Source of the DNA: Macrostomum lignano
Taxonomy: Eukaryota
DNA: 33,815 bases
Reading direction: 5' to 3'
Assembly: GCA_002269645.1 (NCBI GenBank)
Contig: NIVC01001609.1
Span: 1 to 33,815, forward strand
In this document: positions 328 to 29,200 of the stretch, piece by piece
Position numbering within the stretch: the first letter of the stretch is position 1
How the letters are laid out: every line of letters starts with the position of its first letter
Program-made: the position numbers and the translations under genes
The notes under the pieces: model-generated
Databases searched by the model: none
What the model saw: the letters and a program-made list of their open reading frames with translations, nothing else
What the model was told of the DNA's origin: nothing

Positions 328-525
328 CGAGGGATGTTCCATAAGTACTTATACTTTTGCATGCTGCTCAGGAACTACGCAACCAATCATTGTAAGTTTT
401 ATGTCGCTGGAAAGCGGCTTTACTCATCTTTAATCTGTCGCCAAAATCATTTCGTTCTGTCAACTATGTCAAAAGTTACAACAAAAAACGTAGTCAAAGG
501 TCACCCATAGACTTACAAGAAATTT
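328..525. repeat. Left terminal inverted repeat of the mariner element
   Basis: Inverted match to 1500-1694. This is why ORFs 304..510(+) and 1515..1784(-) share the same peptide. Confidence 0.92.
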
Positions 526-597
526 AAAGAGCAACAACTACAATGGCAAGCATGAAAACAGAGGCGCCTTGTTGATGACAGAAAGTTTGACTTCTTG

Positions 598-1300
598 TCA
601 CTCATCCTCAGTCGGTACCGACACCTTCTCAACGTAGTTTCCACCGGAGTTGATGCACTTGGTCCACCTGTTAAACATGCTTTTGATGGCTTCTGCGTAC
701 AGCTGTCGGGGGATGACATACAGCAGAATTCTGCGGACTTCCTCCTCGATCTGGTTCCTGGTCTCGTACACGCGTCCTTTCAGATGGCGCTTCAACTCTG
801 GAAATAAAGCAAAGTCTGCTGGTGCCAGGTCTGGAGAGTAAGGAGGGTGAGGTAGAAGATGGAGCTTCAGCTTGCTGATTGCCTCGACTGTCTTTTGTGC
901 TGTATGAGGCCTTGCATTGTCATGATGAAGAATGAAAGGTCTGGGATGGGATTTTCACGAGCGCTTTTCGGATGTCATGATGCAGCTTTGTTAGCGTTTC
1001 AACGTAGCGCTCAGAGTTTATTGTAGTGTTTGGCTCCAAAAACTCGACAGTTAGAGGACCATTGCAGTCGAAAAACAGAGACAGCATGATCTTCTTTCCA
1101 TGTGCGTCCCTTTGAGCTTTTACCGGAGGATTGGTCCTTCCTGCTTCGAACTGCTCAACCCAGTTGTAGACGGTCATCCTGCTCACCGCATTAGCTCCAT
1201 GAATGTTGCATAAATCCGCATAAATCTCTGATCGCTTTTTTCCGAGTTTCCAGAGGGTAAAAATTGCAGCGCGCTGTCCTTCCCTTGAGTTCACATCCAT
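598..1300 (-). pseudogene. Mariner transposase pseudogene with an internal deletion and a frameshift
   Basis: ATG at 1300 gives MDVNSREGQRAAIFTLWKLGKKRSEIYADL...VSRMTVYNWVEQFEAGRT (N-terminal HTH), fused directly to NPPVKAQ..GKKIMLSLFFDCNG..EFL. After a frameshift near 950-970 it reads LHHDNARPH...HPPYSPDLAPADFALF (34 residues between the two Asp), ending RWTKCINSGGNYVEK. Confidence 0.92.
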
Positions 1301-1499
1301 GGTGATGCAGCAGCAGCCAAGGTGGTGAAACTTTACAAGATTAAGATGCTGTGATCTTAAGATTAAGATGCTGTGAAAGCTTAGGCCAGTATTTTCCATA
1401 GACGAAAAGGGTGTGGCATTCGCTTATGAAGCAAAAAAGAATGCATTATGTAGAATCCGAAATAACTCTGCCTGCTGAACTTTGAAGTTTTGATTTTGA

Positions 1500-1694
1500 A
1501 AATTTCTTGTAAGTCTATGGGTGACCTTTGACTACGTTTTTTGTTGTAACTTTTGACATAGTTGACAGAACGAAATGATTTTGGCGACAGATTAAAGATG
1601 AGTAAAGCCGCTTTCCAGCAACATAAAACTTACAATGATTGGTTGCGTAGTTCCTGAGCAGCATGCAAAAGTATAAGTACTTATGGAACATCCC
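1500..1694. repeat. Right terminal inverted repeat of the mariner element, terminal bases damaged
   Basis: 195-bp inverted copy of 331-525. It ends CCC-A-TA instead of the expected CCCTCG-TA. Confidence 0.9.
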
Positions 1695-2943
1695 ATAAAG
1701 AGGTTTTCTTATAAAAATTTGTTTTGAAAACTCTACACAATCAACTTGTAAAAACTGAATGACTTTAGGAAAAATTTTTGTCATGAAATTTATGTAAATT
1801 TTCTGTTTTTTGCATATACTAGTGTATATTTAGCTACAATAAGATTCTTGTTCTGACATACACTATTATACAATCTAGACCTTGAAGTCTAAAAGATAAT
1901 TTAACTATATATTTTTCATGGATATTGATATATTGGGTCTTTTTAAGAGTAGATAGATAATTATTGGACCTTGGAAGGCCCTCTAACCAAGAGGTTAATA
2001 GCTAACAATTGGGCATGGAAAGTTTTAAGGTAAGGAGATTTTTCACAGAAACTAACATTATCTATCTATATTTAATTTTGGATATCCCCTGAGTGTCTAG
2101 CAAAAGTTTCAAAAAGTTGGAAATTGAAAGTATTTATATTTATTTATCTACTAGAGGTCATTTCACAAGAGACTTTTGAACCATAATACAGACTGCTTTT
2201 TGAAACTAAAAAAATTGAAGTTCAAAAACATGATGGATCCTCTCATAGAATGACCCATAGCTACACTCTCAAATCTATTACATAGTATGCTAGAAAAATG
2301 TAAATATCTGTTTGCAAAACTTTGTAATTAAAACATCTTTAATTAAAAAATTTCTAAAAGTAAGAAATTAAAAAGTAATTGTTAAAAAACATTTTACTTA
2401 CTAAATTAGAAATGTTAATTTATAAAAAAAATAATTAAAAAAATCCAATATACTAAAAATTATTTCACTAAAAATATTAAGTCTGTCTATGTGGGTCTAT
2501 ATACAATTTGTTTGCTATGGACTCCTAAACCACTACCACTCAACCAAATGGCACCAAATTTTGCACCCATCCTAAGCTCTTTATAGAGAATGTTTAGGTC
2601 TTAGTTGTCTTCCTACTTAAAAGTGCAAAAAATGGATAAAAAGTGCAATTTTTTCACTACTATCAATATAAAAATAAGACTTCAAAGGCCTAAATAGTTT
2701 CATAGGCATGGTGTCTATTAGTCCCATTTGTACATATTCAAAAGATAAAAACAAATCTTTTTGTTCTTTTTATTGCTTATGTTAGCAATATTCATTTTAA
2801 AAGCTAGTACATCATCAGTCATAGTTGTATAAGCAAAATTATTCTATAATACTGATTTTAACTTTCTTTAATTTCTACTTTAACCAAAAAATTACATGCA
2901 AGTTGTTTTTTTGGATTTTCAGTGCCTCATCTAACTTATTCTA

Positions 2944-5900
2944 ATGTCGAAGACACCCGATGGGGGTACTGTAAACCCTCCAAAAGCAGATTCTGATACT
3001 ATCAGAACCTCAAAAATTGCTCGTCCACGTATCTTTGGTCAGCAATTGTCTGCAAATGAGCCGAGTATCAAGAAAATTCGGCTCCAAAGTAAGTAATTTA
3101 AGCGATGTCAGTTCGAGTACAGGATACATTATTCACAGGTTCCCATCACCTTTTTCCCATTTCTGCCTTTTGCAGAAAGCAATTTGCCAGTACCGTCATT
3201 GGATACAGGCCAGGCCCAATCGTCGAGGCCAATCAAGCAGACATCCATTCCTCTACCGAAGACAATCAGAGAGCCAGGTCCAGCTGCTAATATTGAAGGA
3301 GCCAGCAATTTGGAGTTTTCTATTAATCAGACTGCATTAAACACCGAGCAGGACACAGGTGCAGAGAACATTTGCAGCACCCCTTCTGTCAAGATTACTT
3401 CTCAACTGTCTGGTTCAAGCAATCGAGATGAAATTCCAAACCTTGAAAAAGTTTTAGCCACCAACAGTCGCTTGGTTCGGGATCTGACTAATCAAAAAAA
3501 GCTGGTAGCTGAGAAAGACGTTCTAATCGCTGAGCTTCAAAAAAAGCTTTCTGATGTCAACAATTCAGCGGACTCGGGCAAAGTAGGGCAACAGAAGTCA
3601 GAAGTCCGCCTGAATCAACTTATGAGCAGTGCAAGCAACACTAGCAGGTGCATTGAACGTGATGCTGATGCACAAACTAGTTTCGAAACTATCCAATCGC
3701 CAACTCGTAATAATCTTCGGCAGCAAATTAACGAGCTAAAAAATCAGAATCAAATTCTTCAACGCAATAACGAAGAGTTAAGCGCTCAACTAACTCAAAT
3801 AAAAGAGGAGTCTATTTCGCCTGAGGAAGCTAAGAAACTCCGGGAAGTAAATAGTGAATTGCAAAGACAAATACTATCAATTCAGGAAAACGACTGCGGC
3901 TCTGAAGAGTACACTGAAAAACAGCGGTGTGAACAGCTTCAGTTACTGCAAACTAACTACAACAATCTCAGTCATGAAAAGTCACTCCAAGATAGAGAAG
4001 TTGATAACTTGCAGAGCAGACTTTCGAAACTACAGGACGAAGCCACGAGTTCTTCCAAAGAGAGTTCCAACCTGAAAGAGCAACTTCTACATTACCAACA
4101 GCAACTAGATGATTTGCGCTGCGAACTGCAATCGACAGAAGATTGCAAAGGCTATTTAGAATGCGAGTCCATTGACCTAAATTCTCGTCTATCACTTCTC
4201 ACTAATCGCTTTAAAGAGGTGGAGGTCGAGAAGGAGATGCTGGAAGAGAAGCTGCGTTCGCTACAAGAAGAGCACGACCATGTGTGCGAGTCGAAATCGT
4301 CGAAGGAGAAGGAGGTGGAGGAGCTGCGATCGCGGTTGTCAGAGTTACAGAACGAAGCAGTGTGCTCTTCTGAGAAAGCTACTGAGCTTGAAGCACAGGT
4401 GCTGGAGTATCAACAGCAGCTGAACGATCTTCGCGAGAAAGTTCGTACCACGGAGGAGCTTAAATCTGCGATCGAGACCGACTGCAGTGATCTGACATCT
4501 CGTCTAGCTGAAGTGAATCAGCTGTTAGAATCTAAAGACGAAGCGCTTACAAAATCTAGCGACAGAATCCAAGAGGTTGAAGTCGAGAAGGAGATGCTGG
4601 AAGAGAAGCTGCGTTCGCTACAAGAAGAGCACGACCATGTGTGCGAGTCGAAATCGTCGAAGGAGAAGGAGGTGGAGGAGCTGCGATCGCGGTTGTCAGA
4701 GTTACAGAACGAAGCAGTGTGCTCTTCTGAGAAAGCTACTGAGCTTGAAGCACAGGTGCTGGAGTATCAACAGCAGCTGAACGATCTTCGCGAGAAAGTT
4801 CGTACCACGGAGGAGCTTAAATCTGCGATCGAGACCGACTGCAGTGATCTGACATCTCGTCTAGCTGAAGTGAATCAGCTGTTAGAATCTAAAGACGAAG
4901 CGCTTACAAAATCTAGCGACAGAATCCAAGAGGTTGAAGTCGAGAAGGAGATGCTGGAAGAGAAGCTGCGTTCGCTACAAGAAGAGCACGACCATGTGTG
5001 CGAGTCGAAATCGTCGAAGGAGAAGGAGGTGGAGGAGCTGCGATCGCGGTTGTCAGAGTTACAGAACGAAGCAGTGTGCTCTTCTGAGAAAGCTACTGAG
5101 CTTGAAGCACAGGTGCTGGAGTATCAACAGCAGCTGAACGATCTTCGCGAGAAAGTTCGTACCACGGAGGAGCTTAAATCTGCGATCGAGACCGACTGCA
5201 GTGATCTGACATCTCGTCTAGCTGAAGTGAATCAGCTGTTAGAATCTAAAGACGAAGCGCTTACAAAATCTAGCGACAGAATCCAAGAGGTTGAAGTCGA
5301 GAAGGAGATGCTGGAAGAGAAGCTGCGTTCGCTACAAGAAGAGCACGACCATGTGTGCGAGTCGAAATCGTCGAAGGAGAAGGAGGTGGAGGAGCTGCGA
5401 TCGCGGTTGTCAGAGTTACAGAACGAAGCAGTGTGCTCTTCTGAGAAAGCTACTGAGCTTGAAGCACAGGTGCTGGAGTATCAACAGCAGCTGAACGATC
5501 TTCGCGAGAAAGTTCGTACCACGGAGGAGCTTAAATCTGCGATCGAGACCGACTGCAGTGATCTGACATCTCGTCTAGCTGAAGTGAATCAGCTGTTAGA
5601 ATCTAAAGACGAAGCGCTTACAAAATCTAGCGACAGAATCCAAGAGGTTGAAGTCGAGAAGGAGATGCTGGAAGAGAAGCTGCGTTCGCTACAAGAAGAG
5701 CACGACCATGTGTGCGAGTCGAAATCGTCGAAGGAGAAGGAGGTGGAGGAGCTGCGATCGCGGTTGTCAGAGTTACAGAACGAAGCAGTGTGCTCTTCTG
5801 AGAAAGCTACTGAGCTTGAAGCACAGGTGCTGGAGTATCAACAGCAGCTGAACGATCTTCGCGAGAAAGTTCGTACCACGGAGGAGCTTAAATCTGCGAT

Positions 5901-8900
5901 CGAGACCGACTGCAGTGATCTGACATCTCGTCTAGCTGAAGTGAATCAGCTGTTAGAATCTAAAGACGAAGCGCTTACAAAATCTAGCGACAGAATCCAA
6001 GAGGTTGAAGTCGAGAAGGAGATGCTGGAAGAGAAGCTGCGTTCGCTACAAGAAGAGCACGACCATGTGTGCGAGTCGAAATCGTCGAAGGAGAAGGAGG
6101 TGGAGGAGCTGCGATCGCGGTTGTCAGAGTTACAGAACGAAGCAGTGTGCTCTTCTGAGAAAGCTACTGAGCTTGAAGCACAGGTGCTGGAGTATCAACA
6201 GCAGCTGAACGATCTTCGCGAGAAAGTTCGTACCACGGAGGAGCTTAAATCTGCGATCGAGACCGACTGCAGTGATCTGACATCTCGTCTAGCTGAAGTG
6301 AATCAGCTGTTAGAATCTAAAGACGAAGCGCTTACAAAATCTAGCGACAGAATCCAAGAGGTTGAAGTCGAGAAGGAGATGCTGGAAGAGAAGCTGCGTT
6401 CGCTACAAGAAGAGCACGACCATGTGTGCGAGTCGAAATCGTCGAAGGAGAAGGAGGTGGAGGAGCTGCGATCGCGGTTGTCAGAGTTACAGAACGAAGC
6501 AGTGTGCTCTTCTGAGAAAGCTACTGAGCTTGAAGCACAGGTGCTGGAGTATCAACAGCAGCTGAACGATCTTCGCGAGAAAGTTCGTACCACGGAGGAG
6601 CTTAAATCTGCGATCGAGACCGACTGCAGTGATCTGACATCTCGTCTAGCTGAAGTGAATCAGCTGTTAGAATCTAAAGACGAAGCGCTTACAAAATCTA
6701 GCGACAGAATCCAAGAGGTTGAAGTCGAGAAGGAGATGCTGGAAGAGAAGCTGCGTTCGCTACAAGAAGAGCACGACCATGTGTGCGAGTCGAAATCGTC
6801 GAAGGAGAAGGAGGTGGAGGAGCTGCGATCGCGGTTGTCAGAGTTACAGAACGAAGCAGTGTGCTCTTCTGAGAAAGCTACTGAGCTTGAAGCACAGGTG
6901 CTGGAGTATCAACAGCAGCTGAACGATCTTCGCGAGAAAGTTCGTACCACGGAGGAGCTTAAATCTGCGATCGAGACCGACTGCAGTGATCTGACATCTC
7001 GTCTAGCTGAAGTGAATCAGCTGTTAGAATCTAAAGACGAAGCGCTTACAAAATCTAGCGACAGAATCCAAGAGGTTGAAGTCGAGAAGGAGATGCTGGA
7101 AGAGAAGCTGCGTTCGCTACAAGAAGAGCACGACCATGTGTGCGAGTCGAAATCGTCGAAGGAGAAGGAGGTGGAGGAGCTGCGATCGCGGTTGTCAGAG
7201 TTACAGAACGAAGCAGTGTGCTCTTCTGAGAAAGCTACTGAGCTTGAAGCACAGGTGCTGGAGTATCAACAGCAGCTGAACGATCTTCGCGAGAAAGTTC
7301 GTACCACGGAGGAGCTTAAATCTGCGATCGAGACCGACTGCAGTGATCTGACATCTCGTCTAGCTGAAGTGAATCAGCTGTTAGAATCTAAAGACGAAGC
7401 GCTTACAAAATCTAGCGACAGAATCCAAGAGGTTGAAGTCGAGAAGGAGATGCTGGAAGAGAAGCTGCGTTCGCTACAAGAAGAGCACGACCATGTGTGC
7501 GAGTCGAAATCGTCGAAGGAGAAGGAGGTGGAGGAGCTGCGATCGCGGTTGTCAGAGTTACAGAACGAAGCAGTGTGCTCTTCTGAGAAAGCTACTGAGC
7601 TTGAAGCACAGGTGCTGGAGTATCAACAGCAGCTGAACGATCTTCGCGAGAAAGTTCGTACCACGGAGGAGCTTAAATCTGCGATCGAGACCGACTGCAG
7701 TGATCTGACATCTCGTCTAGCTGAAGTGAATCAGCTGTTAGAATCTAAAGACGAAGCGCTTACAAAATCTAGCGACAGAATCCAAGAGGTTGAAGTCGAG
7801 AAGGAGATGCTGGAAGAGAAGCTGCGTTCGCTACAAGAAGAGCACGACCATGTGTGCGAGTCGAAATCGTCGAAGGAGAAGGAGGTGGAGGAGCTGCGAT
7901 CGCGGTTGTCAGAGTTACAGAACGAAGCAGTGTGCTCTTCTGAGAAAGCTACTGAGCTTGAAGCACAGGTGCTGGAGTATCAACAGCAGCTGAACGATCT
8001 TCGCGAGAAAGTTCGTACCACGGAGGAGCTTAAATCTGCGATCGAGACCGACTGCAGTGATCTGACATCTCGTCTAGCTGAAGTGAATCAGCTGTTAGAA
8101 TCTAAAGACGAAGCGCTTACAAAATCTAGCGACAGAATCCAAGAGGTTGAAGTCGAGAAGGAGATGCTGGAAGAGAAGCTGCGTTCGCTACAAGAAGAGC
8201 ACGACCATGTGTGCGAGTCGAAATCGTCGAAGGAGAAGGAGGTGGAGGAGCTGCGATCGCGGTTGTCAGAGTTACAGAACGAAGCAGTGTGCTCTTCTGA
8301 GAAAGCTACTGAGCTTGAAGCACAGGTGCTGGAGTATCAACAGCAGCTGAACGATCTTCGCGAGAAAGTTCGTACCACGGAGGAGCTTAAATCTGCGATC
8401 GAGACCGACTGCAGTGATCTGACATCTCGTCTAGCTGAAGTGAATCAGCTGTTAGAATCTAAAGACGAAGCGCTTACAAAATCTAGCGACAGAATCCAAG
8501 AGGTTGAAGTCGAGAAGGAGATGCTGGAAGAGAAGCTGCGTTCGCTACAAGAAGAGCACGACCATGTGTGCGAGTCGAAATCGTCGAAGGAGAAGGAGGT
8601 GGAGGAGCTGCGATCGCGGTTGTCAGAGTTACAGAACGAAGCAGTGTGCTCTTCTGAGAAAGCTACTGAGCTTGAAGCACAGGTGCTGGAGTATCAACAG
8701 CAGCTGAACGATCTTCGCGAGAAAGTTCGTACCACGGAGGAGCTTAAATCTGCGATCGAGACCGACTGCAGTGATCTGACATCTCGTCTAGCTGAAGTGA
8801 ATCAGCTGTTAGAATCTAAAGACGAAGCGCTTACAAAATCTAGCGACAGAATCCAAGAGGTTGAAGTCGAGAAGGAGATGCTGGAAGAGAAGCTGCGTTC

Positions 8901-11900
8901 GCTACAAGAAGAGCACGACCATGTGTGCGAGTCGAAATCGTCGAAGGAGAAGGAGGTGGAGGAGCTGCGATCGCGGTTGTCAGAGTTACAGAACGAAGCA
9001 GTGTGCTCTTCTGAGAAAGCTACTGAGCTTGAAGCACAGGTGCTGGAGTATCAACAGCAGCTGAACGATCTTCGCGAGAAAGTTCGTACCACGGAGGAGC
9101 TTAAATCTGCGATCGAGACCGACTGCAGTGATCTGACATCTCGTCTAGCTGAAGTGAATCAGCTGTTAGAATCTAAAGACGAAGCGCTTACAAAATCTAG
9201 CGACAGAATCCAAGAGGTTGAAGTCGAGAAGGAGATGCTGGAAGAGAAGCTGCGTTCGCTACAAGAAGAGCACGACCATGTGTGCGAGTCGAAATCGTCG
9301 AAGGAGAAGGAGGTGGAGGAGCTGCGATCGCGGTTGTCAGAGTTACAGAACGAAGCAGTGTGCTCTTCTGAGAAAGCTACTGAGCTTGAAGCACAGGTGC
9401 TGGAGTATCAACAGCAGCTGAACGATCTTCGCGAGAAAGTTCGTACCACGGAGGAGCTTAAATCTGCGATCGAGACCGACTGCAGTGATCTGACATCTCG
9501 TCTAGCTGAAGTGAATCAGCTGTTAGAATCTAAAGACGAAGCGCTTACAAAATCTAGCGACAGAATCCAAGAGGTTGAAGTCGAGAAGGAGATGCTGGAA
9601 GAGAAGCTGCGTTCGCTACAAGAAGAGCACGACCATGTGTGCGAGTCGAAATCGTCGAAGGAGAAGGAGGTGGAGGAGCTGCGATCGCGGTTGTCAGAGT
9701 TACAGAACGAAGCAGTGTGCTCTTCTGAGAAAGCTACTGAGCTTGAAGCACAGGTGCTGGAGTATCAACAGCAGCTGAACGATCTTCGCGAGAAAGTTCG
9801 TACCACGGAGGAGCTTAAATCTGCGATCGAGACCGACTGCAGTGATCTGACATCTCGTCTAGCTGAAGTGAATCAGCTGTTAGAATCTAAAGACGAAGCG
9901 CTTACAAAATCTAGCGACAGAATCCAAGAGGTTGAAGTCGAGAAGGAGATGCTGGAAGAGAAGCTGCGTTCGCTACAAGAAGAGCACGACCATGTGTGCG
10001 AGTCGAAATCGTCGAAGGAGAAGGAGGTGGAGGAGCTGCGATCGCGGTTGTCAGAGTTACAGAACGAAGCAGTGTGCTCTTCTGAGAAAGCTACTGAGCT
10101 TGAAGCACAGGTGCTGGAGTATCAACAGCAGCTGAACGATCTTCGCGAGAAAGTTCGTACCACGGAGGAGCTTAAATCTGCGATCGAGACCGACTGCAGT
10201 GATCTGACATCTCGTCTAGCTGAAGTGAATCAGCTGTTAGAATCTAAAGACGAAGCGCTTACAAAATCTAGCGACAGAATCCAAGAGGTTGAAGTCGAGA
10301 AGGAGATGCTGGAAGAGAAGCTGCGTTCGCTACAAGAAGAGCACGACCATGTGTGCGAGTCGAAATCGTCGAAGGAGAAGGAGGTGGAGGAGCTGCGATC
10401 GCGGTTGTCAGAGTTACAGAACGAAGCAGTGTGCTCTTCTGAGAAAGCTACTGAGCTTGAAGCACAGGTGCTGGAGTATCAACAGCAGCTGAACGATCTT
10501 CGCGAGAAAGTTCGTACCACGGAGGAGCTTAAATCTGCGATCGAGACCGACTGCAGTGATCTGACATCTCGTCTAGCTGAAGTGAATCAGCTGTTAGAAT
10601 CTAAAGACGAAGCGCTTACAAAATCTAGCGACAGAATCCAAGAGGTTGAAGTCGAGAAGGAGATGCTGGAAGAGAAGCTGCGTTCGCTACAAGAAGAGCA
10701 CGACCATGTGTGCGAGTCGAAATCGTCGAAGGAGAAGGAGGTGGAGGAGCTGCGATCGCGGTTGTCAGAGTTACAGAACGAAGCAGTGTGCTCTTCTGAG
10801 AAAGCTACTGAGCTTGAAGCACAGGTGCTGGAGTATCAACAGCAGCTGAACGATCTTCGCGAGAAAGTTCGTACCACGGAGGAGCTTAAATCTGCGATCG
10901 AGACCGACTGCAGTGATCTGACATCTCGTCTAGCTGAAGTGAATCAGCTGTTAGAATCTAAAGACGAAGCGCTTACAAAATCTAGCGACAGAATCCAAGA
11001 GGTTGAAGTCGAGAAGGAGATGCTGGAAGAGAAGCTGCGTTCGCTACAAGAAGAGCACGACCATGTGTGCGAGTCGAAATCGTCGAAGGAGAAGGAGGTG
11101 GAGGAGCTGCGATCGCGGTTGTCAGAGTTACAGAACGAAGCAGTGTGCTCTTCTGAGAAAGCTACTGAGCTTGAAGCACAGGTGCTGGAGTATCAACAGC
11201 AGCTGAACGATCTTCGCGAGAAAGTTCGTACCACGGAGGAGCTTAAATCTGCGATCGAGACCGACTGCAGTGATCTGACATCTCGTCTAGCTGAAGTGAA
11301 TCAGCTGTTAGAATCTAAAGACGAAGCGCTTACAAAATCTAGCGACAGAATCCAAGAGGTTGAAGTCGAGAAGGAGATGCTGGAAGAGAAGCTGCGTTCG
11401 CTACAAGAAGAGCACGACCATGTGTGCGAGTCGAAATCGTCGAAGGAGAAGGAGGTGGAGGAGCTGCGATCGCGGTTGTCAGAGTTACAGAACGAAGCAG
11501 TGTGCTCTTCTGAGAAAGCTACTGAGCTTGAAGCACAGGTGCTGGAGTATCAACAGCAGCTGAACGATCTTCGCGAGAAAGTTCGTACCACGGAGGAGCT
11601 TAAATCTGCGATCGAGACCGACTGCAGTGATCTGACATCTCGTCTAGCTGAAGTGAATCAGCTGTTAGAATCTAAAGACGAAGCGCTTACAAAATCTAGC
11701 GACAGAATCCAAGAGGTTGAAGTCGAGAAGGAGATGCTGGAAGAGAAGCTGCGTTCGCTACAAGAAGAGCACGACCATGTGTGCGAGTCGAAATCGTCGA
11801 AGGAGAAGGAGGTGGAGGAGCTGCGATCGCGGTTGTCAGAGTTACAGAACGAAGCAGTGTGCTCTTCTGAGAAAGCTACTGAGCTTGAAGCACAGGTGCT

Positions 11901-14900
11901 GGAGTATCAACAGCAGCTGAACGATCTTCGCGAGAAAGTTCGTACCACGGAGGAGCTTAAATCTGCGATCGAGACCGACTGCAGTGATCTGACATCTCGT
12001 CTAGCTGAAGTGAATCAGCTGTTAGAATCTAAAGACGAAGCGCTTACAAAATCTAGCGACAGAATCCAAGAGGTTGAAGTCGAGAAGGAGATGCTGGAAG
12101 AGAAGCTGCGTTCGCTACAAGAAGAGCACGACCATGTGTGCGAGTCGAAATCGTCGAAGGAGAAGGAGGTGGAGGAGCTGCGATCGCGGTTGTCAGAGTT
12201 ACAGAACGAAGCAGTGTGCTCTTCTGAGAAAGCTACTGAGCTTGAAGCACAGGTGCTGGAGTATCAACAGCAGCTGAACGATCTTCGCGAGAAAGTTCGT
12301 ACCACGGAGGAGCTTAAATCTGCGATCGAGACCGACTGCAGTGATCTGACATCTCGTCTAGCTGAAGTGAATCAGCTGTTAGAATCTAAAGACGAAGCGC
12401 TTACAAAATCTAGCGACAGAATCCAAGAGGTTGAAGTCGAGAAGGAGATGCTGGAAGAGAAGCTGCGTTCGCTACAAGAAGAGCACGACCATGTGTGCGA
12501 GTCGAAATCGTCGAAGGAGAAGGAGGTGGAGGAGCTGCGATCGCGGTTGTCAGAGTTACAGAACGAAGCAGTGTGCTCTTCTGAGAAAGCTACTGAGCTT
12601 GAAGCACAGGTGCTGGAGTATCAACAGCAGCTGAACGATCTTCGCGAGAAAGTTCGTACCACGGAGGAGCTTAAATCTGCGATCGAGACCGACTGCAGTG
12701 ATCTGACATCTCGTCTAGCTGAAGTGAATCAGCTGTTAGAATCTAAAGACGAAGCGCTTACAAAATCTAGCGACAGAATCCAAGAGGTTGAAGTCGAGAA
12801 GGAGATGCTGGAAGAGAAGCTGCGTTCGCTACAAGAAGAGCACGACCATGTGTGCGAGTCGAAATCGTCGAAGGAGAAGGAGGTGGAGGAGCTGCGATCG
12901 CGGTTGTCAGAGTTACAGAACGAAGCAGTGTGCTCTTCTGAGAAAGCTACTGAGCTTGAAGCACAGGTGCTGGAGTATCAACAGCAGCTGAACGATCTTC
13001 GCGAGAAAGTTCGTACCACGGAGGAGCTTAAATCTGCGATCGAGACCGACTGCAGTGATCTGACATCTCGTCTAGCTGAAGTGAATCAGCTGTTAGAATC
13101 TAAAGACGAAGCGCTTACAAAATCTAGCGACAGAATCCAAGAGGTTGAAGTCGAGAAGGAGATGCTGGAAGAGAAGCTGCGTTCGCTACAAGAAGAGCAC
13201 GACCATGTGTGCGAGTCGAAATCGTCGAAGGAGAAGGAGGTGGAGGAGCTGCGATCGCGGTTGTCAGAGTTACAGAACGAAGCAGTGTGCTCTTCTGAGA
13301 AAGCTACTGAGCTTGAAGCACAGGTGCTGGAGTATCAACAGCAGCTGAACGATCTTCGCGAGAAAGTTCGTACCACGGAGGAGCTTAAATCTGCGATCGA
13401 GACCGACTGCAGTGATCTGACATCTCGTCTAGCTGAAGTGAATCAGCTGTTAGAATCTAAAGACGAAGCGCTTACAAAATCTAGCGACAGAATCCAAGAG
13501 GTTGAAGTCGAGAAGGAGATGCTGGAAGAGAAGCTGCGTTCGCTACAAGAAGAGCACGACCATGTGTGCGAGTCGAAATCGTCGAAGGAGAAGGAGGTGG
13601 AGGAGCTGCGATCGCGGTTGTCAGAGTTACAGAACGAAGCAGTGTGCTCTTCTGAGAAAGCTACTGAGCTTGAAGCACAGGTGCTGGAGTATCAACAGCA
13701 GCTGAACGATCTTCGCGAGAAAGTTCGTACCACGGAGGAGCTTAAATCTGCGATCGAGACCGACTGCAGTGATCTGACATCTCGTCTAGCTGAAGTGAAT
13801 CAGCTGTTAGAATCTAAAGACGAAGCGCTTACAAAATCTAGCGACAGAATCCAAGAGGTTGAAGTCGAGAAGGAGATGCTGGAAGAGAAGCTGCGTTCGC
13901 TACAAGAAGAGCACGACCATGTGTGCGAGTCGAAATCGTCGAAGGAGAAGGAGGTGGAGGAGCTGCGATCGCGGTTGTCAGAGTTACAGAACGAAGCAGT
14001 GTGCTCTTCTGAGAAAGCTACTGAGCTTGAAGCACAGGTGCTGGAGTATCAACAGCAGCTGAACGATCTTCGCGAGAAAGTTCGTACCACGGAGGAGCTT
14101 AAATCTGCGATCGAGACCGACTGCAGTGATCTGACATCTCGTCTAGCTGAAGTGAATCAGCTGTTAGAATCTAAAGACGAAGCGCTTACAAAATCTAGCG
14201 ACAGAATCCAAGAGGTTGAAGTCGAGAAGGAGATGCTGGAAGAGAAGCTGCGTTCGCTACAAGAAGAGCACGACCATGTGTGCGAGTCGAAATCGTCGAA
14301 GGAGAAGGAGGTGGAGGAGCTGCGATCGCGGTTGTCAGAGTTACAGAACGAAGCAGTGTGCTCTTCTGAGAAAGCTACTGAGCTTGAAGCACAGGTGCTG
14401 GAGTATCAACAGCAGCTGAACGATCTTCGCGAGAAAGTTCGTACCACGGAGGAGCTTAAATCTGCGATCGAGACCGACTGCAGTGATCTGACATCTCGTC
14501 TAGCTGAAGTGAATCAGCTGTTAGAATCTAAAGACGAAGCGCTTACAAAATCTAGCGACAGAATCCAAGAGGTTGAAGTCGAGAAGGAGATGCTGGAAGA
14601 GAAGCTGCGTTCGCTACAAGAAGAGCACGACCATGTGTGCGAGTCGAAATCGTCGAAGGAGAAGGAGGTGGAGGAGCTGCGATCGCGGTTGTCAGAGTTA
14701 CAGAACGAAGCAGTGTGCTCTTCTGAGAAAGCTACTGAGCTTGAAGCACAGGTGCTGGAGTATCAACAGCAGCTGAACGATCTTCGCGAGAAAGTTCGTA
14801 CCACGGAGGAGCTTAAATCTGCGATCGAGACCGACTGCAGTGATCTGACATCTCGTCTAGCTGAAGTGAATCAGCTGTTAGAATCTAAAGACGAAGCGCT

Positions 14901-17575
14901 TACAAAATCTAGCGACAGAATCCAAGAGGTTGAAGTCGAGAAGGAGATGCTGGAAGAGAAGCTGCGTTCGCTACAAGAAGAGCACGACCATGTGTGCGAG
15001 TCGAAATCGTCGAAGGAGAAGGAGGTGGAGGAGCTGCGATCGCGGTTGTCAGAGTTACAGAACGAAGCAGTGTGCTCTTCTGAGAAAGCTACTGAGCTTG
15101 AAGCACAGGTGCTGGAGTATCAACAGCAGCTGAACGATCTTCGCGAGAAAGTTCGTACCACGGAGGAGCTTAAATCTGCGATCGAGACCGACTGCAGTGA
15201 TCTGACATCTCGTCTAGCTGAAGTGAATCAGCTGTTAGAATCTAAAGACGAAGCGCTTACAAAATCTAGCGACAGAATCCAAGAGGTTGAAGTCGAGAAG
15301 GAGATGCTGGAAGAGAAGCTGCGTTCGCTACAAGAAGAGCACGACCATGTGTGCGAGTCGAAATCGTCGAAGGAGAAGGAGGTGGAGGAGCTGCGATCGC
15401 GGTTGTCAGAGTTACAGAACGAAGCAGTGTGCTCTTCTGAGAAAGCTACTGAGCTTGAAGCACAGGTGCTGGAGTATCAACAGCAGCTGAACGATCTTCG
15501 CGAGAAAGTTCGTACCACGGAGGAGCTTAAATCTGCGATCGAGACCGACTGCAGTGATCTGACATCTCGTCTAGCTGAAGTGAATCAGCTGTTAGAATCT
15601 AAAGACGAAGCGCTTACAAAATCTAGCGACAGAATCCAAGAGGTTGAAGTCGAGAAGGAGATGCTGGAAGAGAAGCTGCGTTCGCTACAAGAAGAGCACG
15701 ACCATGTGTGCGAGTCGAAATCGTCGAAGGAGAAGGAGGTGGAGGAGCTGCGATCGCGGTTGTCAGAGTTACAGAACGAAGCAGTGTGCTCTTCTGAGAA
15801 AGCTACTGAGCTTGAAGCACAGGTGCTGGAGTATCAACAGCAGCTGAACGATCTTCGCGAGAAAGTTCGTACCACGGAGGAGCTTAAATCTGCGATCGAG
15901 ACCGACTGCAGTGATCTGACATCTCGTCTAGCTGAAGTGAATCAGCTGTTAGAATCTAAAGACGAAGCGCTTACAAAATCTAGCGACAGAATCCAAGAGG
16001 TTGAAGTCGAGAAGGAGATGCTGGAAGAGAAGCTGCGTTCGCTACAAGAAGAGCACGACCATGTGTGCGAGTCGAAATCGTCGAAGGAGAAGGAGGTGGA
16101 GGAGCTGCGATCCCGATTGTGTGAGTCGCAGATGAAGTTACTTGAAAGTGAAGAGGCTTTATCGAAGATTTCTGAGGAAAACGCTTATCTAAGTGACAAG
16201 CTTGATAATGAAGTGAAATCTGCTGCGTCTTCCACAGCCAGAGTTGAATCGCTAAACGCGGAAGTTCTTCAGAAAGAATATGAGATTATTGCTTTTCAAA
16301 ATTCTATTTCGTCAGCGGAAGCAAAGATAGCTGCTTTGGAATCTTCTTTTGCCAGTTTATGCGATGAAAAATTAAAGCTTGAAAATGAATTTCAGCTTAA
16401 GGCATCGCAGTACGTTGAATTGGAGTGTCGAATTCGTAACCTTGAGGCTTGGAATAGCTCGACTAAGTCTTCGTTGGATTCGAAAGTAGCTGAACTTGCC
16501 GCTATGGAGGAACTGCTCAAGGAAGCAAACACTAAGCTAGACGGCGCTTGCGCTAATGCTTCCGCTCTTGAGAGTGAGCACTCCGAGATGCAGCGTAGAA
16601 ATGTAGAATTGTCCAACGCTCTGGCAACTAAAGTTGTTGAGCTAAGCCGAGCCGAGGAGCATAGAGAGGCAGTACTTTCTGATCTGTCCGATGTTAAAAA
16701 ACAGCTCGCCGACTGCAGCCAGGAGTTAGTCTCAAGTCGCGAGCTGTTTCAAGCGGAGATCCACCAACTTAATGATGACATCAAGGTCAAAGAGCAATCG
16801 ATCGCCGAGACAACCGCCAGTCTGGCTGCTGCTCGGCAGGAAATCGAAAAATCAGTTAGCGAAGTGTCTACGCTGCAGTCTCGGCTTGATAACACCAAGA
16901 TGAAGGTTGGATTTCTGGAGACCGAGTTGGCCGCCTTTAAGGCGTTTGACGCCAATTCTGAATGCGCCCAGCAGGATTGTCCAAATTTGCCTAAGCTGCG
17001 CGACTCCAAAGCAACCATTTCTGGTCTTGAGGTTAGAATCGATTATATCCAACATGCTTTACTAAAGTAGTATAATACGAGCTAGTATATATATAAATAT
17101 AACTTGTTCATGACTCGGTGATTTTCATGCACTCCCCTAATTTTCGTTAAGAATCTCGCCTAATTCCCCTAAAGAATCTTCCTCAATTCCCCTAAATAAT
17201 CTCCGTCGATTAAGAATTCCTTATATCCTTCCTCCCCCAAATAAGATTCAGCTATGCGCCAACGCTAAACAACGATACATATTGCAGGTTCGACTGCGCC
17301 AGCTCGGTAAGATGTATCGCAGTCTGCGACCAGCCAACGCAGCCGCTGCCGCCGCTCAGCCGACCGCCGCAGCTTCGACTGCCACGCCTGAACTCGCCAC
17401 GGTCGCCGCCGCCGCTGCCGCAGTCCCAGCCGCCACCCTCCGGTCGCGTCAGCCGACTCAGTCGGCTTCTAACGCTGCTTCCAGCGTCGGCGGAGTCAAC
17501 TCGCCGCGCTCGTCGCGTCGTCGGACGTCAGCTGCGCCGGAAGAGGAGCGGCCGCCCAACTGCAAGACGTCTTGA
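2944..17575 (+). CDS. Giant tandem-repeat coiled-coil protein of unknown identity, ~4,762 aa as modelled; exons 2944-3088, 3176-17031, 17288-17575
   Basis: ATG at 2944 is open to a GTAAGT donor at 3089. A pyrimidine-rich TTTTGCAG acceptor ending 3175 joins in frame (phase 1) to the 4,628-aa ORF. A phase-0 GAG|GTTAGA donor at 17032 and a TTGCAG| acceptor ending 17287 join in frame to ORF 17282..17575. Unspliced, the ORF ends at 17070. Exon 2 is very secure; exons 1 and 3 are inferred from splice signals and phase. Confidence 0.85.
3901..4215 (+). repeat. Diverged 105-aa copy of the coiled-coil repeat unit preceding the perfect array
   Basis: QLQLLQ...EVDNLQSRLSKLQDEA...LLHYQQQLDDLR...DLNSRL aligns without gaps to KLRSLQ...EVEELRSRLSELQNEA...VLEYQQQLNDLR...DLTSRL. 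It is 14 aa shorter at its C-terminal end. Confidence 0.85.
4216..16112 (+). repeat. Coding tandem array: 33 full copies plus a 116-bp partial copy of a 357-bp (119-aa) unit
   Basis: Units start at 4216+357n. The alternate-frame ORF recurs identically every 357 bp (4577...15644). The only differences I saw are two synonymous changes at the start of copy 1 (4221, 4224). Confidence 0.98.
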
Positions 17576-17642: not shown

Positions 17643-18245
17643 GACTCTGCCACTCTTGTCTTGTCTCCCTCTTCGTTTACTCTGCCACCCCGCTCTGTGA
17701 CTCTGCCACCCTCTCTATGACTCTGCCACCCTCTCTGACTCTGCCACCCTCTCTATGACTCTGCCACCCGCTATATGACTCTGCCACCCTCTCTATGACT
17801 CTGCCACCCTCTCTATGACTCTGCCACCCGCTATATGACTCTGCCACCCTCTCTATGACTCTGCCACCCTCTCTATGACTCTGCCACCCTCTCTATGACT
17901 CTGCCACCCGCTATATGACTCTGCCACCCTCTCTATGACTCTGCCACTCTTGTCTTGTCTCCCTCTTCCTTTACTCTACCACCCGCTATATGACTCTGCC
18001 ACTCCGCTCTATGACTCTGCCACCCTCTCTATGACTCTGCCACCCTCTCTATGACTCTGCCACCCTCTCTATGACTCTGCCACCCTCTCTATGACTCTGC
18101 CACCCTGATCTATGATTCTGCCACCCTTTTTATGACTCTGCCACCCTCTCTGACTCTTCCACCCTCTCTATGACTCTGCCACCCTCTCTGACTCTTCCAC
18201 CCTCTCTATGACTCTTCCACCCTGCTCTATGATTCTGCCACCCCA
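17643..18245. repeat. Pyrimidine-rich ~20-bp minisatellite (ATGACTCTGCCACCCTCTCT) with a higher-order block
   Basis: Many tandem copies with variants (CCCGCTAT, CTTCCACC). The spacer block GACTCTGCCACTCTTGTCTTGTCTCCCTCTTC occurs at 17643 and 17937. Confidence 0.95.
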
Positions 18246-20184: not shown

Positions 20185-20472
20185 TTAGTATTTCAACTTT
20201 CCTAGGTAGAATTTGCGCAGCACAGCTTTGAAGTTCACGTACCGGTGGATCAAGCGGAACTCGTTAGTTGCATCCCGGCCGGCCACTTCCAGCAGCTTGT
20301 CTTTGCCGCCTGGGTGGAATTTTAAGTAGCTGGTAACGTCGAAGACTAGGCCTTCTAACGCAATCCAGCAGCTGTTCTCGTCAGTGTGAAGCCTCAGTTC
20401 ATCGAACGTGATCCACTCTGTGCTGCTTACCGATTTCCGCGATTCTTGGAAACTTTTCCACTGCTTGTCCAT
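20185..20472 (-). CDS. Stand-alone cytochrome b5-like heme-binding protein, 95 aa, intronless as seen
   Basis: ITFDELRLH..ENSCWIALEGLVFDVTSYLKFHPGGKDKLLEVAGRDATNEF..IHRYVN..LGKL: HPGG motif plus a second His in HxxVN, resembling the b5 domain of CYB5R4/IRC21-type proteins. There is an in-frame stop upstream of the ATG. Confidence 0.9.
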   Translation of the reverse strand: MDKQWKSFQESRKSVSSTEWITFDELRLHTDENSCWIALEGLVFDVTSYLKFHPGGKDKLLEVAGRDATNEFRLIHRYVNFKAVLRKFYLGKLKY

Positions 20473-28742: not shown

Positions 28743-29200
28743 ACCCTCTGCTTAAACGTACATTAGCTAAACCTCTGCTTAAAAGTACATTAGCTAAACC
28801 TCTGCCCCAATGTACAGAAGCTAAACCTCTGCCCCAATGTACAGTAGCTAAACCTCTGCCCCAATGGACATTAGCTAAACCTCTGCCCCAATGTACATAT
28901 ATTAGCTAAACCTCTGCCCCAATGTACATATATTAGCTAAACCTCTGCCCCAATGTACAGTAGCTAAACCTCTGCCCCAATGGACATTAGCTAAACATCT
29001 GCCCCAATGTACAGTAGCTAAACCTCTGCCCCAATGGACATTAGCTGAACTTCTGCCCCATGGATGAAGGAATACTATAGTGTATATAGTGTATTCCTTC
29101 ATCCATGCTCTGCCCCAATGTACATTAGCTAACCGTCCGTCCAAGCGTACATTAGCTAAAATTTCTGTCCCAATTTACGAGTACATTAGCCAACACTATC
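28743..29200. repeat. ~27-bp minisatellite (AGCTAAACCTCTGCCCCAATGTACAGT and variants)
   Basis: Tandem copies are directly visible, degenerate at both ends and interrupted at 29059-29107. Confidence 0.93.

What the first reader, a model, noticed from the sequence alone, without database searches (positions are those of the whole stretch)
2944..17575. Giant dumbbell protein: basic disordered head, ~4,000-aa acidic perfect-repeat rod, basic tail
Seen: one exon of ~13.9 kb encodes 33.3 copies of a 119-aa unit with no Pro, Gly, Phe or Trp, and 32 acidic versus 17 basic residues (net -15 per unit). The head is Ser/Pro/Lys/Arg-rich and the tail is Ala/Ser/Arg-rich. There is no signal peptide or transmembrane segment. 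Known: coiled coils rise about 0.15 nm per residue. Inference: an intracellular rod of roughly 0.6 micrometre, each unit adding about 18 nm, acting as a molecular ruler, tether or filament (for example ciliary rootlet, sperm accessory structure or microtubule cross-bridge). I do not recognise the unit as any named protein. This is the best candidate for an undescribed system in the window.
Basis: partly seen in the sequence, partly recalled or inferred. Interest (0 to 1): 0.88.

Follow-up and report, generated by a model that had tools for sequence, protein, structure and literature searches.

The report
Giant flatworm coiled-coil repeat protein
A real, transcribed gene of the flatworm Macrostomum lignano encodes a protein of about 4,760 residues that is almost entirely coiled coil, built from about 33 identical 119-residue units; it has no detectable relatives, its function is untested, and the exact unit count may partly reflect how the genome was assembled.

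Summary
A 357-bp unit repeats 33.4 times (4214..16120), and copies 2-33 are 100% identical. The array lies in one 13,856-nt exon of a three-exon gene (2944..17575) encoding 4,762 aa (546 kDa). The head and tail are basic and disordered, and the rod carries a net charge of about -500.

The window is a whole contig of Macrostomum lignano (NIVC01001609.1). GenBank splits this one ORF into four partial "hypothetical proteins". Two of them confirm both splice junctions.

A colinear paralogous locus carries the same array with 21.4 copies, the same 3' junction and locus-specific fixed differences. The array is therefore genomic and evolves in concert. Unit variants are enriched for synonymous changes (10 of 19, p=0.0035).

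The unit is exactly 17 heptads in one unbroken register, and AlphaFold predicts all helix. An exhaustive HMMER search found no homologue outside M. lignano, and no Pfam family passes its threshold.

The rod reading is supported as inference. The ruler or tether function is untested. The copy number and perfect identity come from a PacBio/Canu/Pilon assembly with visible consensus errors nearby, so they need long-read confirmation.

Verdict: a new, orphan member of a known kind (giant tandem-repeat coiled-coil proteins such as trypanosome FAZ10). Interest is moderate.

The parts
2944..3088 (+). Exon 1 (start codon at 2944; 48 codons plus 1 base). A polypyrimidine tract ending in AG at 2922 lies 21 nt upstream of the ATG and may be a trans-splice acceptor.
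   Evidence: Sequence read. The exon1/exon2 junction (…IRLQ|K|SNLPVPS…) is identical in GenBank PAA65872.1 (P0007).
3089..3175 (+). Intron 1, 87 nt, GTAAGT…TTGCAG
   Evidence: confirmed by P0007.
3176..17031 (+). Exon 2, 13,856 nt: rest of the disordered head, a unique coiled coil, the repeat array and the unique C-terminal coiled coil.
   Evidence: ORF, model. Four GenBank partial CDS (2944..5214, 5392..7356, 7534..8325, 16009..17575) all lie on this strand and in this frame.
3178..3252 (+). Two SxIP-like motifs (SNLP at aa 50-53, TSIP at aa 71-74) in the basic Ser/Pro-rich head. This is only a lead for EB1/microtubule plus-end binding.
   Evidence: these are the only two [ST]x[IL]P matches in 4,762 aa. 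Composition shuffles of the head give P(>=2) = 0.08, which is not significant.
3979..4215 (+). Old, diverged copy of the unit at the 5' edge of the array (…EKSLQDREVDNLQSRLSKLQDEATSSS…DLNSRLS…).
   Evidence: Local alignment of the head to the unit, score 240.
4214..16120 (+). Tandem array of 33.4 x 357 bp (119 aa = 17 heptads). Copies 2-33 are identical, and copy 1 differs at 2 synonymous third-position bases.
16121..17031 (+). Unique C-terminal coiled coil: two long helices with breaks near AWNSSTKSSL and SECAQQDCPNLPKL.
   Evidence: AlphaFold2 of P0001. Only sub-threshold coiled-coil Pfam hits.
17032..17287 (+). Intron 2, 256 nt (GTTAGA…TTGCAG).
   Evidence: The junction …ISGLE|VRLRQLGK… is identical in GenBank PAA65875.1 (P0001) and UniProt A0A1I8HCS0 (P0002).
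17288..17575 (+). Exon 3: a short helix followed by an Ala/Ser/Arg-rich disordered basic tail (pI 11.8) and the TGA stop at 17573..17575.
   Evidence: pLDDT <50 for the last ~80 aa.
17561..17572 (+). C-terminal CKTS, a CaaX-type box with Cys at -4 and a possible farnesylation site. It is preceded by SPRSSRRRTS.
   Evidence: Sequence; conserved in the paralogue. [quoted passage not shown] Prenylation of this protein was not tested.

Best explanation
This is a real, expressed, lineage-restricted gene of Macrostomum lignano. Its product (about 546 kDa as assembled) is about 95% alpha-helical heptad repeat.

A 119-aa unit of exactly 17 heptads has been amplified in tandem and is kept uniform by unequal crossing-over or gene conversion. 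The hydrophobic seam therefore runs in one register through the whole array.

Inferred: two chains pair in parallel and in register into an acidic rod several hundred nanometres long. Its short, basic, disordered ends are the only parts able to dock onto partners. The C-terminal end also carries a CaaX-type CKTS box that could be farnesylated.

The most likely role is a long cytoskeletal spacer or tether whose length is set by the copy number of the unit. The two subgenome copies (33 versus 21 units as assembled) would then give rods of different lengths.

Shown here: the gene structure, transcription of both ends and part of the array, the heptad continuity, the helical prediction, the charge layout, the second locus, concerted evolution, and coding constraint.

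Inferred only: dimerisation, orientation, rod continuity, prenylation, binding partners, cellular site, and any ruler function.
For: - Array and ORF.
- One of six frames of the unit is open.
- GenBank RNA-seq-based partial models reproduce both introns, and three of them read into the array in frame. The annotation method is in PMC5730564.
- Second locus: L001 (NIVC01002479.1) is colinear with flanks 96-97.5% identical, and carries the same array at 21.4 copies. Its 3' junction is identical, at unit position 118/119.
- Six to seven sites are fixed or nearly fixed between the two arrays, which indicates concerted evolution.
- Flank divergence of 1-2.3% matches the 1.9-2.4% between M. lignano subgenomes (PMC10733133).
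- Coding constraint: the unit consensus differs by 5 synonymous and 2 non-synonymous changes (pN/pS 0.11). Head plus tail give pN/pS 0.42. Of 19 variable unit sites, 10 are synonymous against 22% expected (p=0.0035).
- Heptads: 119 = 17x7, with 22 of 34 a/d positions hydrophobic in one register. Leu is the commonest residue at d, and a holds Leu, Val and Lys. The g-e' pairs are 4 attractive and 1 repulsive per unit.
- AlphaFold2 of two units gives pLDDT 93.3, all helix. The tail is two long helices followed by disorder.
- Charges and absence of a transmembrane segment.
Against: - No full-length transcript, protein, localisation or phenotype is known.
- The AlphaFold2 monomer breaks at CSSE in each unit and folds back, so a jointed or hairpin chain is not excluded.
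- The net charge of -15 per unit would oppose close packing unless counter-ions or basic partners are present.
- pN/pS of 0.42 in head and tail rests on only 29 differences.
- The L001 copy reads as frameshifted as assembled. I attribute this to consensus errors, but it could be a decaying copy.
- The copy number and the perfect identity are not verified by reads.
- The SxIP lead is not significant (P=0.08).
Confidence: 0.55

Rival explanations
1. The gene is real, but the headline numbers are technical. On this view the count of 33.4 units and the 100% identity of 32 units come from Canu layout and consensus of noisy PacBio CLR reads followed by Pilon short-read polishing. The true array would be shorter, longer or more heterogeneous.
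For: - Assembly method: Canu 1.4 on PacBio data, polished with Pilon using Illumina and RNA-seq reads (PMC5730564).
- The paralogous array carries 18 single-base deletions, all located exactly on five polymorphic sites. This is a signature of a consensus built from mixed units.
- The EF-hand/WD40 gene on this same contig changes frame four times, always by -1.
- 36% of the assembly length lies in chimeric scaffolds, and allelic variants are collapsed or expanded (PMC10733133).
- An 11.9-kb array is hard for CLR reads to span.
- For FAZ10, the real protein was about four times larger than the assembled repeats predicted (PMC5358337).
Against: - Polishing did not homogenise the paralogous array. 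Minority variants present in 3 of 21 units survive there. A truly heterogeneous array in the window should therefore also have kept its variants or shown deletion scars, and it shows neither.
- Two independent loci both carry long arrays.
- The edge units differ from the core in the same way at both loci.
Confidence: 0.3
2. The repeat does not form one straight two-stranded rod. Each unit would instead bend at the Ala/Ser-core CSSE stretch and pack as antiparallel helical hairpins or bundles, like a spectrin-type chain of beads. That would give a shorter, elastic filament rather than a rigid 0.6-um ruler.
For: - AlphaFold2 of two units places loops at residues 51-54 and 170-173, the same site in each unit, with pTM 0.60 for a folded-back model.
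- The best, non-significant Foldseek matches are antiparallel bundles such as the SMC coiled coil, F-BAR domains and chemoreceptors.
- The unit shows a weak internal half-repeat of 56/63 aa (score 61 against shuffles of 35 +/- 6).
Against: - Monomer AlphaFold2 models of dimeric coiled coils commonly fold back to bury the hydrophobic seam.
- There is no Pro or Gly, and no shift of the heptad register, at the proposed turn.
- No Foldseek match has E < 0.1.
Confidence: 0.15
3. It is a functional analogue, or an unrecognisably diverged orthologue, of farnesylated mitotic coiled-coil proteins (CENP-F/mitosin, nematode HCP-1/2, CENP-E tail, Spindly). Such a protein would be a kinetochore- or nuclear-envelope-associated fibrous protein with microtubule-binding basic ends.
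For: - A C-terminal CKTS box lies next to a basic stretch.
- Both ends are basic and disordered around a long coiled coil with internal tandem repeats.
- The tandem repeats and two microtubule-binding ends of CENP-F are recalled from my own knowledge, not tested here.
Against: - Pfam CENP-F_leu_zip scores 13-15 bits against a cut-off of 34.5.
- CENP-F_N and the CENP-F C-terminal Rb-binding domain give no hit at E<=1.
- The exhaustive HMMER search found no animal homologue at all.
- CXXX boxes are permissive and common (PMC10320760).
Confidence: 0.1
4. The expansion is a selectively neutral or transient runaway of a minisatellite-like coding repeat inside an otherwise ordinary small coiled-coil gene. 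Length would be irrelevant to function, or the gene would be on its way to decay in a redundant neopolyploid genome.
For: - The array is extremely young or homogenised (0 differences among 32 units).
- Copy number differs by a third between paralogues.
- The genome is rich in tandem repeats: 15% of the genome (PMC5730564), and nine other arrays lie in this window.
- Three subgenomes give redundancy.
Against: - There is an excess of synonymous variants in the unit (p=0.0035) and between the array consensuses (5 synonymous to 2 non-synonymous).
- The unit length is an exact multiple of both 3 nt and 7 aa, so the reading frame and heptad phase are preserved.
- The array with the same junction predates the split of the two loci.
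- It is transcribed.
Confidence: 0.15

Closest known systems
Trypanosoma brucei FAZ10 and the other giant repetitive cytoskeletal proteins of trypanosomatids (PMC5358337)
   Same: FAZ10 has a single ORF of about 13 kb and a predicted mass of at least 500 kDa. Its N- and C-terminal regions carry no recognisable motifs. Its coiled-coil regions are filled with dozens of nearly identical tandem repeats whose length is a whole number of heptads (35 aa = 5 heptads; here 119 aa = 17). It has no transmembrane helix, and its repeats were suspected of being mis-assembled.
   Different: There is no sequence homology: no trypanosomatid hit appeared in the exhaustive search. The unit here is 3.4 times longer and the array is one uninterrupted block. 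The organism is an animal. FAZ10 has a demonstrated location and RNAi phenotype, and this protein has none.
CENP-F/mitosin family (and the farnesylated coiled-coil kinetochore proteins CENP-E and Spindly)
   Same: These are very long coiled coils with a C-terminal CaaX-type box (CKVQ, CKTQ, CPQQ against CKTS here). From my own knowledge, CENP-F also has basic terminal regions and internal tandem repeats.
   Different: No CENP-F Pfam domain passes its threshold, and HMMER finds no homology. The repeat array is far larger and perfectly uniform.
Classical two-stranded rods: tropomyosin, myosin and paramyosin tails, intermediate filaments
   Same: They share an unbroken heptad pattern, acidic net charge, absence of Pro and Gly, and Ala/Ser core patches that may give local flexibility.
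   Different: The Pfam models Myosin_tail_1, Tropomyosin and Filament all score far below their cut-offs (18.5 vs 38.1, 13 vs 38.6, and 23 vs 40 bits). There is no motor or head domain, and none of the 28-residue or 40-residue charge periodicities were tested.
Coiled-coil spacers and rulers (yeast Spc110, rootletin/CROCC, CCDC39/40)
   Same: That these proteins act as spacers is my own knowledge.
   Different: I found no homology. The Rootletin family does not appear in the Pfam scans at E<=1, and CCDC39 is only a 'faint' precomputed hit. Ruler behaviour is not tested.

Membership tests
Heptad-repeat alpha-helical coiled coil (structural class) | Hydrophobic residues at a/d positions with 3.5-residue periodicity in a persistent register | tested here: met
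   119 aa = 17 heptads, with 12 and 10 core hydrophobic residues in two columns spaced 3/4 apart. The strongest Fourier period is 3.5, and one register holds across the unit junction. Position-by-position listing.
Heptad-repeat alpha-helical coiled coil (structural class) | Helical, with no helix breakers | tested here: met
   The unit has no Pro or Gly. AlphaFold2 gives pLDDT 93.3 and all helix, except 4-residue loops at CSSE.
Heptad-repeat alpha-helical coiled coil (structural class) | Oligomeric state and strand orientation (parallel dimer) | not testable with these tools
   Only monomer prediction is available. The a/d residue types and the g-e' pairs (4 attractive, 1 repulsive) are compatible with a parallel dimer but not decisive.
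CENP-F / mitosin | CENP-F_N, CENP-F_leu_zip or CENP-F C-terminal Rb-binding Pfam domains above the gathering score | tested here: not met
   CENP-F_leu_zip scores 13-15 bits against a cut-off of 34.5. The other two give no hit at E<=1.
CaaX-prenylated proteins | Cys at position -4 from the C-terminus with a permissive a1-a2-X | tested here: met
   The protein ends …PPNCKTS* in the window and in the paralogue. Related boxes CKTQ and CQTS are farnesylated.
CaaX-prenylated proteins | Actual attachment of a farnesyl or geranylgeranyl group | not testable with these tools
   This needs metabolic labelling or mass spectrometry.
SxIP microtubule plus-end-tracking proteins | [ST]x[IL]P motif in a basic Ser/Pro-rich disordered region | tested here: inconclusive
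   There are two motifs (aa 50 and 71) in the basic head and none elsewhere. Shuffles of the head give P(>=2)=0.08.
Intermediate filament (PF00038) | Filament rod domain above the gathering score | tested here: not met
   15-23 bits against a cut-off of 40.
Myosin/paramyosin tail (PF01576) | Myosin_tail_1 above the gathering score | tested here: not met
   8-18.5 bits against a cut-off of 38.1.
Giant tandem-repeat cytoskeletal proteins of the FAZ10 type (an architectural kind, not a homology family) | ORF above 10 kb, dozens of near-identical repeats that are whole heptad multiples, motif-less ends, no transmembrane segment | tested here: met
   compared with PMC5358337.
Giant tandem-repeat cytoskeletal proteins of the FAZ10 type (an architectural kind, not a homology family) | Insoluble cytoskeletal localisation | not testable with these tools
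   I found no expression or localisation data.

The most novel reading that the evidence does not exclude
The protein is a Macrostomum-specific molecular ruler or tether 0.4-0.7 um long. One end would be held on a membrane by a farnesylated basic tail, and the other would bind microtubule ends through its basic SxIP-bearing head. Its length would be tuned by unequal crossing-over in a perfectly homogenised 17-heptad array, so that the subgenome copies (33 versus 21 units) build structures of different dimensions, for example in the ciliated epidermis, sperm or stylet.
Probability: 0.1. Interest if true: 0.7.

Novelty: new member of a known kind. Interest (0 to 1): 0.4.

Why it matters
If the model is right, the public annotation of a widely used regeneration and sexual-selection model misses one of its largest proteins, because it splits it into four "hypothetical protein" fragments.

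The gene would be a clean natural example of a coding tandem array whose unit is simultaneously a multiple of 3 nt and of 7 aa. It is kept uniform within a locus and diverges between recent subgenome copies, which makes it useful for studying concerted evolution after whole-genome duplication.

If rod length follows copy number, the gene would also offer a tractable test of the coiled-coil ruler idea, because M. lignano has working RNAi, in situ hybridisation and transgenesis.

On present evidence it remains an orphan structural protein of unknown location, so the value is potential rather than demonstrated.

Tried and rejected
- **Word-index protein search, head + one unit + tail.** All 8,000 candidate slots were filled by generic coiled-coil words and nothing scored. 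This says little about homologues. The tail-only search and the exhaustive HMMER search replaced it.
- **Exhaustive HMMER search of head + unit.** Beyond M. lignano fragments, the best hits were bacterial or metagenomic repeat proteins at 24-30% identity (E 2e-8 to 2e-4). I rejected these as compositional similarity.
- **PF28422 and PF19220 precomputed on the C-terminal fragment.** These turned out to be 'faint' hits to CCDC89 and Rod_CreS and carry no information.
- **Pfam scans of head, unit and tail.** Dozens of coiled-coil families appeared, none near its cut-off.
- **PDB sequence search of two units.** The only hit was the reovirus sigma-1 coiled coil at E ~1e-3, rejected.
- **Foldseek of the two-unit model against PDB.** Nothing scored below E=0.1.
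- **Exact look-up of the neighbouring cytochrome b5 ORF.** Not on record, because the annotated product is 106 aa rather than 95.
- **Literature and supplement searches for Mlig030421, Mlig032420, Mlig029970, PAA65872, PAA65875 and A0A1I8HCS0.** No occurrences, so no expression data.
- **The M. lignano adhesive proteins (PMC6410801).** These are secreted Cys-rich proteins, not coiled coils, and are unrelated.
- **Rfam and tRNA scans of the window.** Nothing found.
- **Read-through of the exon-2 donor to the TAG at 17068..17070.** I considered this as the true C-terminus and rejected it because two independent public models use the 17031|17288 junction.
- **L001 as a pseudogene.** I considered this and think it less likely than consensus error. 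Its head and tail ORFs are intact, and all 18 one-base deletions fall on polymorphic sites.

Full report
**1.

Tandem Repeats Finder reports a 357-bp unit repeated 33.4 times at 4214..16120. Cutting the array into units shows that copies 2 to 33 are identical at every one of 357 positions, and copy 1 differs at two bases. The array sits in an ORF of 4,628 codons, 3184..17070.

With an 87-nt GT..AG intron (3089..3175) and a 256-nt intron (17032..17287), the coding sequence is 2944..3088 + 3176..17031 + 17288..17575. This gives 4,762 aa and 546 kDa.

The unit is 119 aa with 32 acidic and 17 basic residues, and has no Pro, Gly, Phe or Trp. Only one of the six frames of the unit is open. The charge layout is:

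| Region | Character | pI | Net charge |
|---|---|---|---|
| First 150 aa | Ser/Pro/Thr-rich | 9.7 | +5 |
| Array | acidic | – | -502 |
| Last 95 aa | Ala/Ser/Arg-rich | 11.8 | +9 |

No 19-residue window exceeds a Kyte-Doolittle mean of 1.23.

**2. Source and public annotation**

A search with the C-terminal 252 aa returned a 100% match to GenBank PAA65875.1, [quoted passage not shown], on a contig of exactly 33,815 bp. It also returned a 97% match to UniProt A0A1I8HCS0. The window is therefore the whole contig NIVC01001609.1 of assembly GCA_002269645.1.

GenBank places four partial CDS on the one ORF, all on the same strand and in the same frame:

- 2944..5214 (728 aa, PAA65872.1)
- 5392..7356 (655 aa)
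- 7534..8325 (264 aa)
- 16009..17575 (436 aa)

The last reproduces the exon 2/3 junction and the stop codon. That annotation was built from RNA-seq (StringTie/TACO plus a de novo transcriptome; PMC5730564). Both ends and part of the array are therefore transcribed, but no public model joins them.

**3. A second locus shows the array is genomic and evolves in concert**

The N-terminal fragment has a 98%-identical relative, PAA57501.1, on the 208,684-bp contig NIVC01002479.1. I fetched that locus as L001.

- It is colinear with the window. Flanks are 96-97.5% identical by BLAST, and substitutions run at 0.7-2.3% per region.
- A 1,367-bp transposon in the window (328..1694) is absent from L001.
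- L001 carries the same 357-bp array with 21.4 copies.
- The junction between the last partial unit and the unique tail falls at the same unit position (118/119) in both loci. The array therefore predates their separation.
- Six to seven sites are fixed or nearly fixed between the two arrays: unit positions 8, 53, 235, 271, 279, 290, and 209 by a bare majority. Each array is largely uniform internally, which is the pattern of concerted evolution.
- The divergence fits the 1.9-2.4% reported between the three subgenomes of this neopolyploid (PMC10733133). L001 is most simply a subgenome paralogue.

**4. Coding constraint**

Between the two array consensuses there are 5 synonymous and 2 non-synonymous differences (pN/pS about 0.11). 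For head plus tail there are 12 synonymous and 17 non-synonymous (pN/pS 0.42). Across all 19 variable unit sites seen in both loci, 10 are synonymous where 22% would be expected (binomial p = 0.0035). The reading frame of the unit is under purifying selection.

**5. How far the perfect array can be trusted**

The assembly was made from PacBio CLR reads with Canu 1.4 and polished with Pilon using Illumina and RNA-seq reads (PMC5730564).

Evidence of local consensus error:

- In L001, the ORF is broken into nine pieces. All 18 one-base deletions lie exactly on five polymorphic sites, while the head and tail ORFs are intact. That is the signature of a consensus drawn from mixed units, not of decay.
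- On the window contig itself, the EF-hand/WD40 gene at 22767..26017 shifts frame four times, always by -1. This is the same kind of error.

The count of units and the absolute identity are therefore not secure.

Evidence against a pure artefact:

- Polishing did not erase minority variants in L001 (3 of 21 units).
- A heterogeneous array in the window would be expected to show variants or deletion scars, and it shows none.

My reading is that the window's array is truly very homogeneous. Its exact length needs spanning reads.

**6. Anatomy of the protein**

- The unit is exactly 17 heptads. Core hydrophobic residues fall in two columns spaced 3/4 apart (12 and 10 of 17). The strongest periodicity is 3.5 residues, and the best register is the same through nearly the whole unit and across the unit junction.
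- Leu is the commonest residue at d. Position a holds Leu, Val and Lys. The g-e' pairs are 4 attractive against 1 repulsive per unit. This is compatible with a parallel in-register dimer but does not prove one.
- AlphaFold2 on two units, without an alignment, gives pLDDT 93.3 and all helix. It places 4-residue loops at CSSE in each unit and folds the chain back on itself. Such fold-back is common for monomer models of dimeric coiled coils. It does mark an Ala/Ser-core soft spot.
- The tail model shows two long helices, a short helix, and about 80 disordered residues, with no globular domain.
- A diverged older copy of the unit lies at the 5' edge of the array, and the unit contains a weak 56/63-aa half-repeat.
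- The protein ends in CKTS, a CaaX-type box conserved in the paralogue. CKTQ and CKVQ are the farnesylation motifs of CENP-E and CENP-F (PMC4384735). CQTS is fully farnesylated in a yeast reporter (PMC10320760).
- The head holds the only two [ST]x[IL]P motifs of the protein, but that is not significant (P = 0.08).

**7. Homology**

Pfam gives only sub-threshold coiled-coil hits for head, unit and tail. An exhaustive HMMER search of head plus one unit against 1.84 billion cluster representatives found only M. lignano fragments, plus four weak hits at 24-30% identity to repeat proteins of bacteria or metagenomes. The tail search found only the two M. lignano entries. PDB sequence and fold searches gave nothing significant. 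At the level of detectable sequence similarity, the gene is restricted to Macrostomum.

**8. Most likely mechanism and rivals**

*Shown:* a transcribed gene under coding constraint whose product is about 95% heptad-continuous helix, with short basic disordered ends.

*Inferred:* two chains form a parallel acidic rod. At 0.1485 nm per residue, that is 17.7 nm per unit and about 0.59 um for the array. The ends are the docking modules, and the C-terminus may be lipid-anchored. The copy number, changed by unequal crossing-over, would set the length. I give this 0.55 overall. The structural part is strong, and the spacer or tether function is weak.

Rivals:

| Rival | Confidence |
|---|---|
| The headline count and identity are technical | 0.3 |
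| A jointed or hairpin chain rather than a straight rod | 0.15 |
| A CENP-F-like farnesylated mitotic fibrous protein | 0.1 |
| A neutral runaway coding minisatellite | 0.15 |

These are not all mutually exclusive with the best explanation.

**9. Comparison with what is known, and verdict**

The closest described thing by architecture is trypanosome FAZ10. It has a 13,005-bp ORF and a predicted mass of at least 502 kDa, with 52 nearly identical 35-aa repeats inside coiled coils. Its ends carry no recognisable motifs, it has no transmembrane helix, and its repeats are probably under-assembled (PMC5358337). There is no homology to it.

Membership of the CENP-F, intermediate filament, myosin-tail and rootletin families was tested through Pfam and not met.

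This is therefore a new, orphan member of a known kind, not a new kind of system. The uniformity of 32 units over 11.4 kb, the exact 17-heptad unit and the contrast between subgenomes are attractive. With no expression, localisation or phenotype, and an unverified copy number, I score interest at 0.4.

Noticed in passing
window 22767..26017 (+): An EF-hand + WD40-repeat gene (GC 54-60%) is readable only by changing frame four times, each time by -1, near 23775, 24100-24140, 24975 and 25345. GenBank annotates only the first 365 aa. This looks like four one-base consensus deletions in the assembly rather than introns or decay.
   Followed up: partly
window 328..1694: A 1,367-bp mariner/Tc1-type element lies just upstream of the giant gene and is absent from the paralogous locus L001. 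It has 222-nt terminal inverted repeats (331-552 / 1473-1694, 94% complementary) and a 159-aa ORF remnant (920..1399, minus strand) with HTH_48 and Transposase_1 domains.
   Followed up: partly
window 17679..18243; L001 20434..20852: A 20-bp minisatellite (ACTCTGCCACCCTCTCTATG, ~29 copies) starts about 100 nt after the stop codon and is conserved at the paralogous locus. It may lie in the 3' UTR.
   Followed up: no
window 32881..33815: The contig ends inside a 16-bp satellite (AAGCATCTGAATGATG, 57 copies), which probably explains why the assembly stops here. It produces three spurious >300-aa ORFs on the minus strand.
   Followed up: no
L001 11271..18872: In the paralogous array, all 18 single-base deletions coincide with five inter-unit polymorphic sites. 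One unit has an in-frame 3-nt deletion (unit positions 94-96). Units 4, 18 and 20 share a V->I / E->K variant pair, which hints at higher-order structure.
   Followed up: partly
P0002 (UniProt A0A1I8HCS0) against window 16009..17575: The older ML2-assembly protein is L001-like at the diagnostic residues. It lacks 62 aa (residues 69-129 of PAA65875.1) and has a 2-aa insertion in the Ala run. It could be a third subgenome copy, an alternative splice form or a model error.
   Followed up: no
window 29374..32780 (-): Exons of a CLC chloride-channel gene (Voltage_CLC and CBS domains) have GC-rich exons set in AT-rich introns. The introns carry 27-bp (28735..29060) and 46-bp (31929..32182) minisatellites.
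   Followed up: no
window 20185..20472 (-): A small cytochrome b5-domain gene (Pfam Cyt-b5, E 3e-23). The ORF from the first ATG is 95 aa, while GenBank's product is 106 aa.
   Followed up: no
window 2905..2922: A polypyrimidine tract ending in AG lies 21 nt upstream of the start codon. It could be a spliced-leader trans-splice acceptor, and 39% of M. lignano genes are reported as trans-spliced.
   Followed up: no
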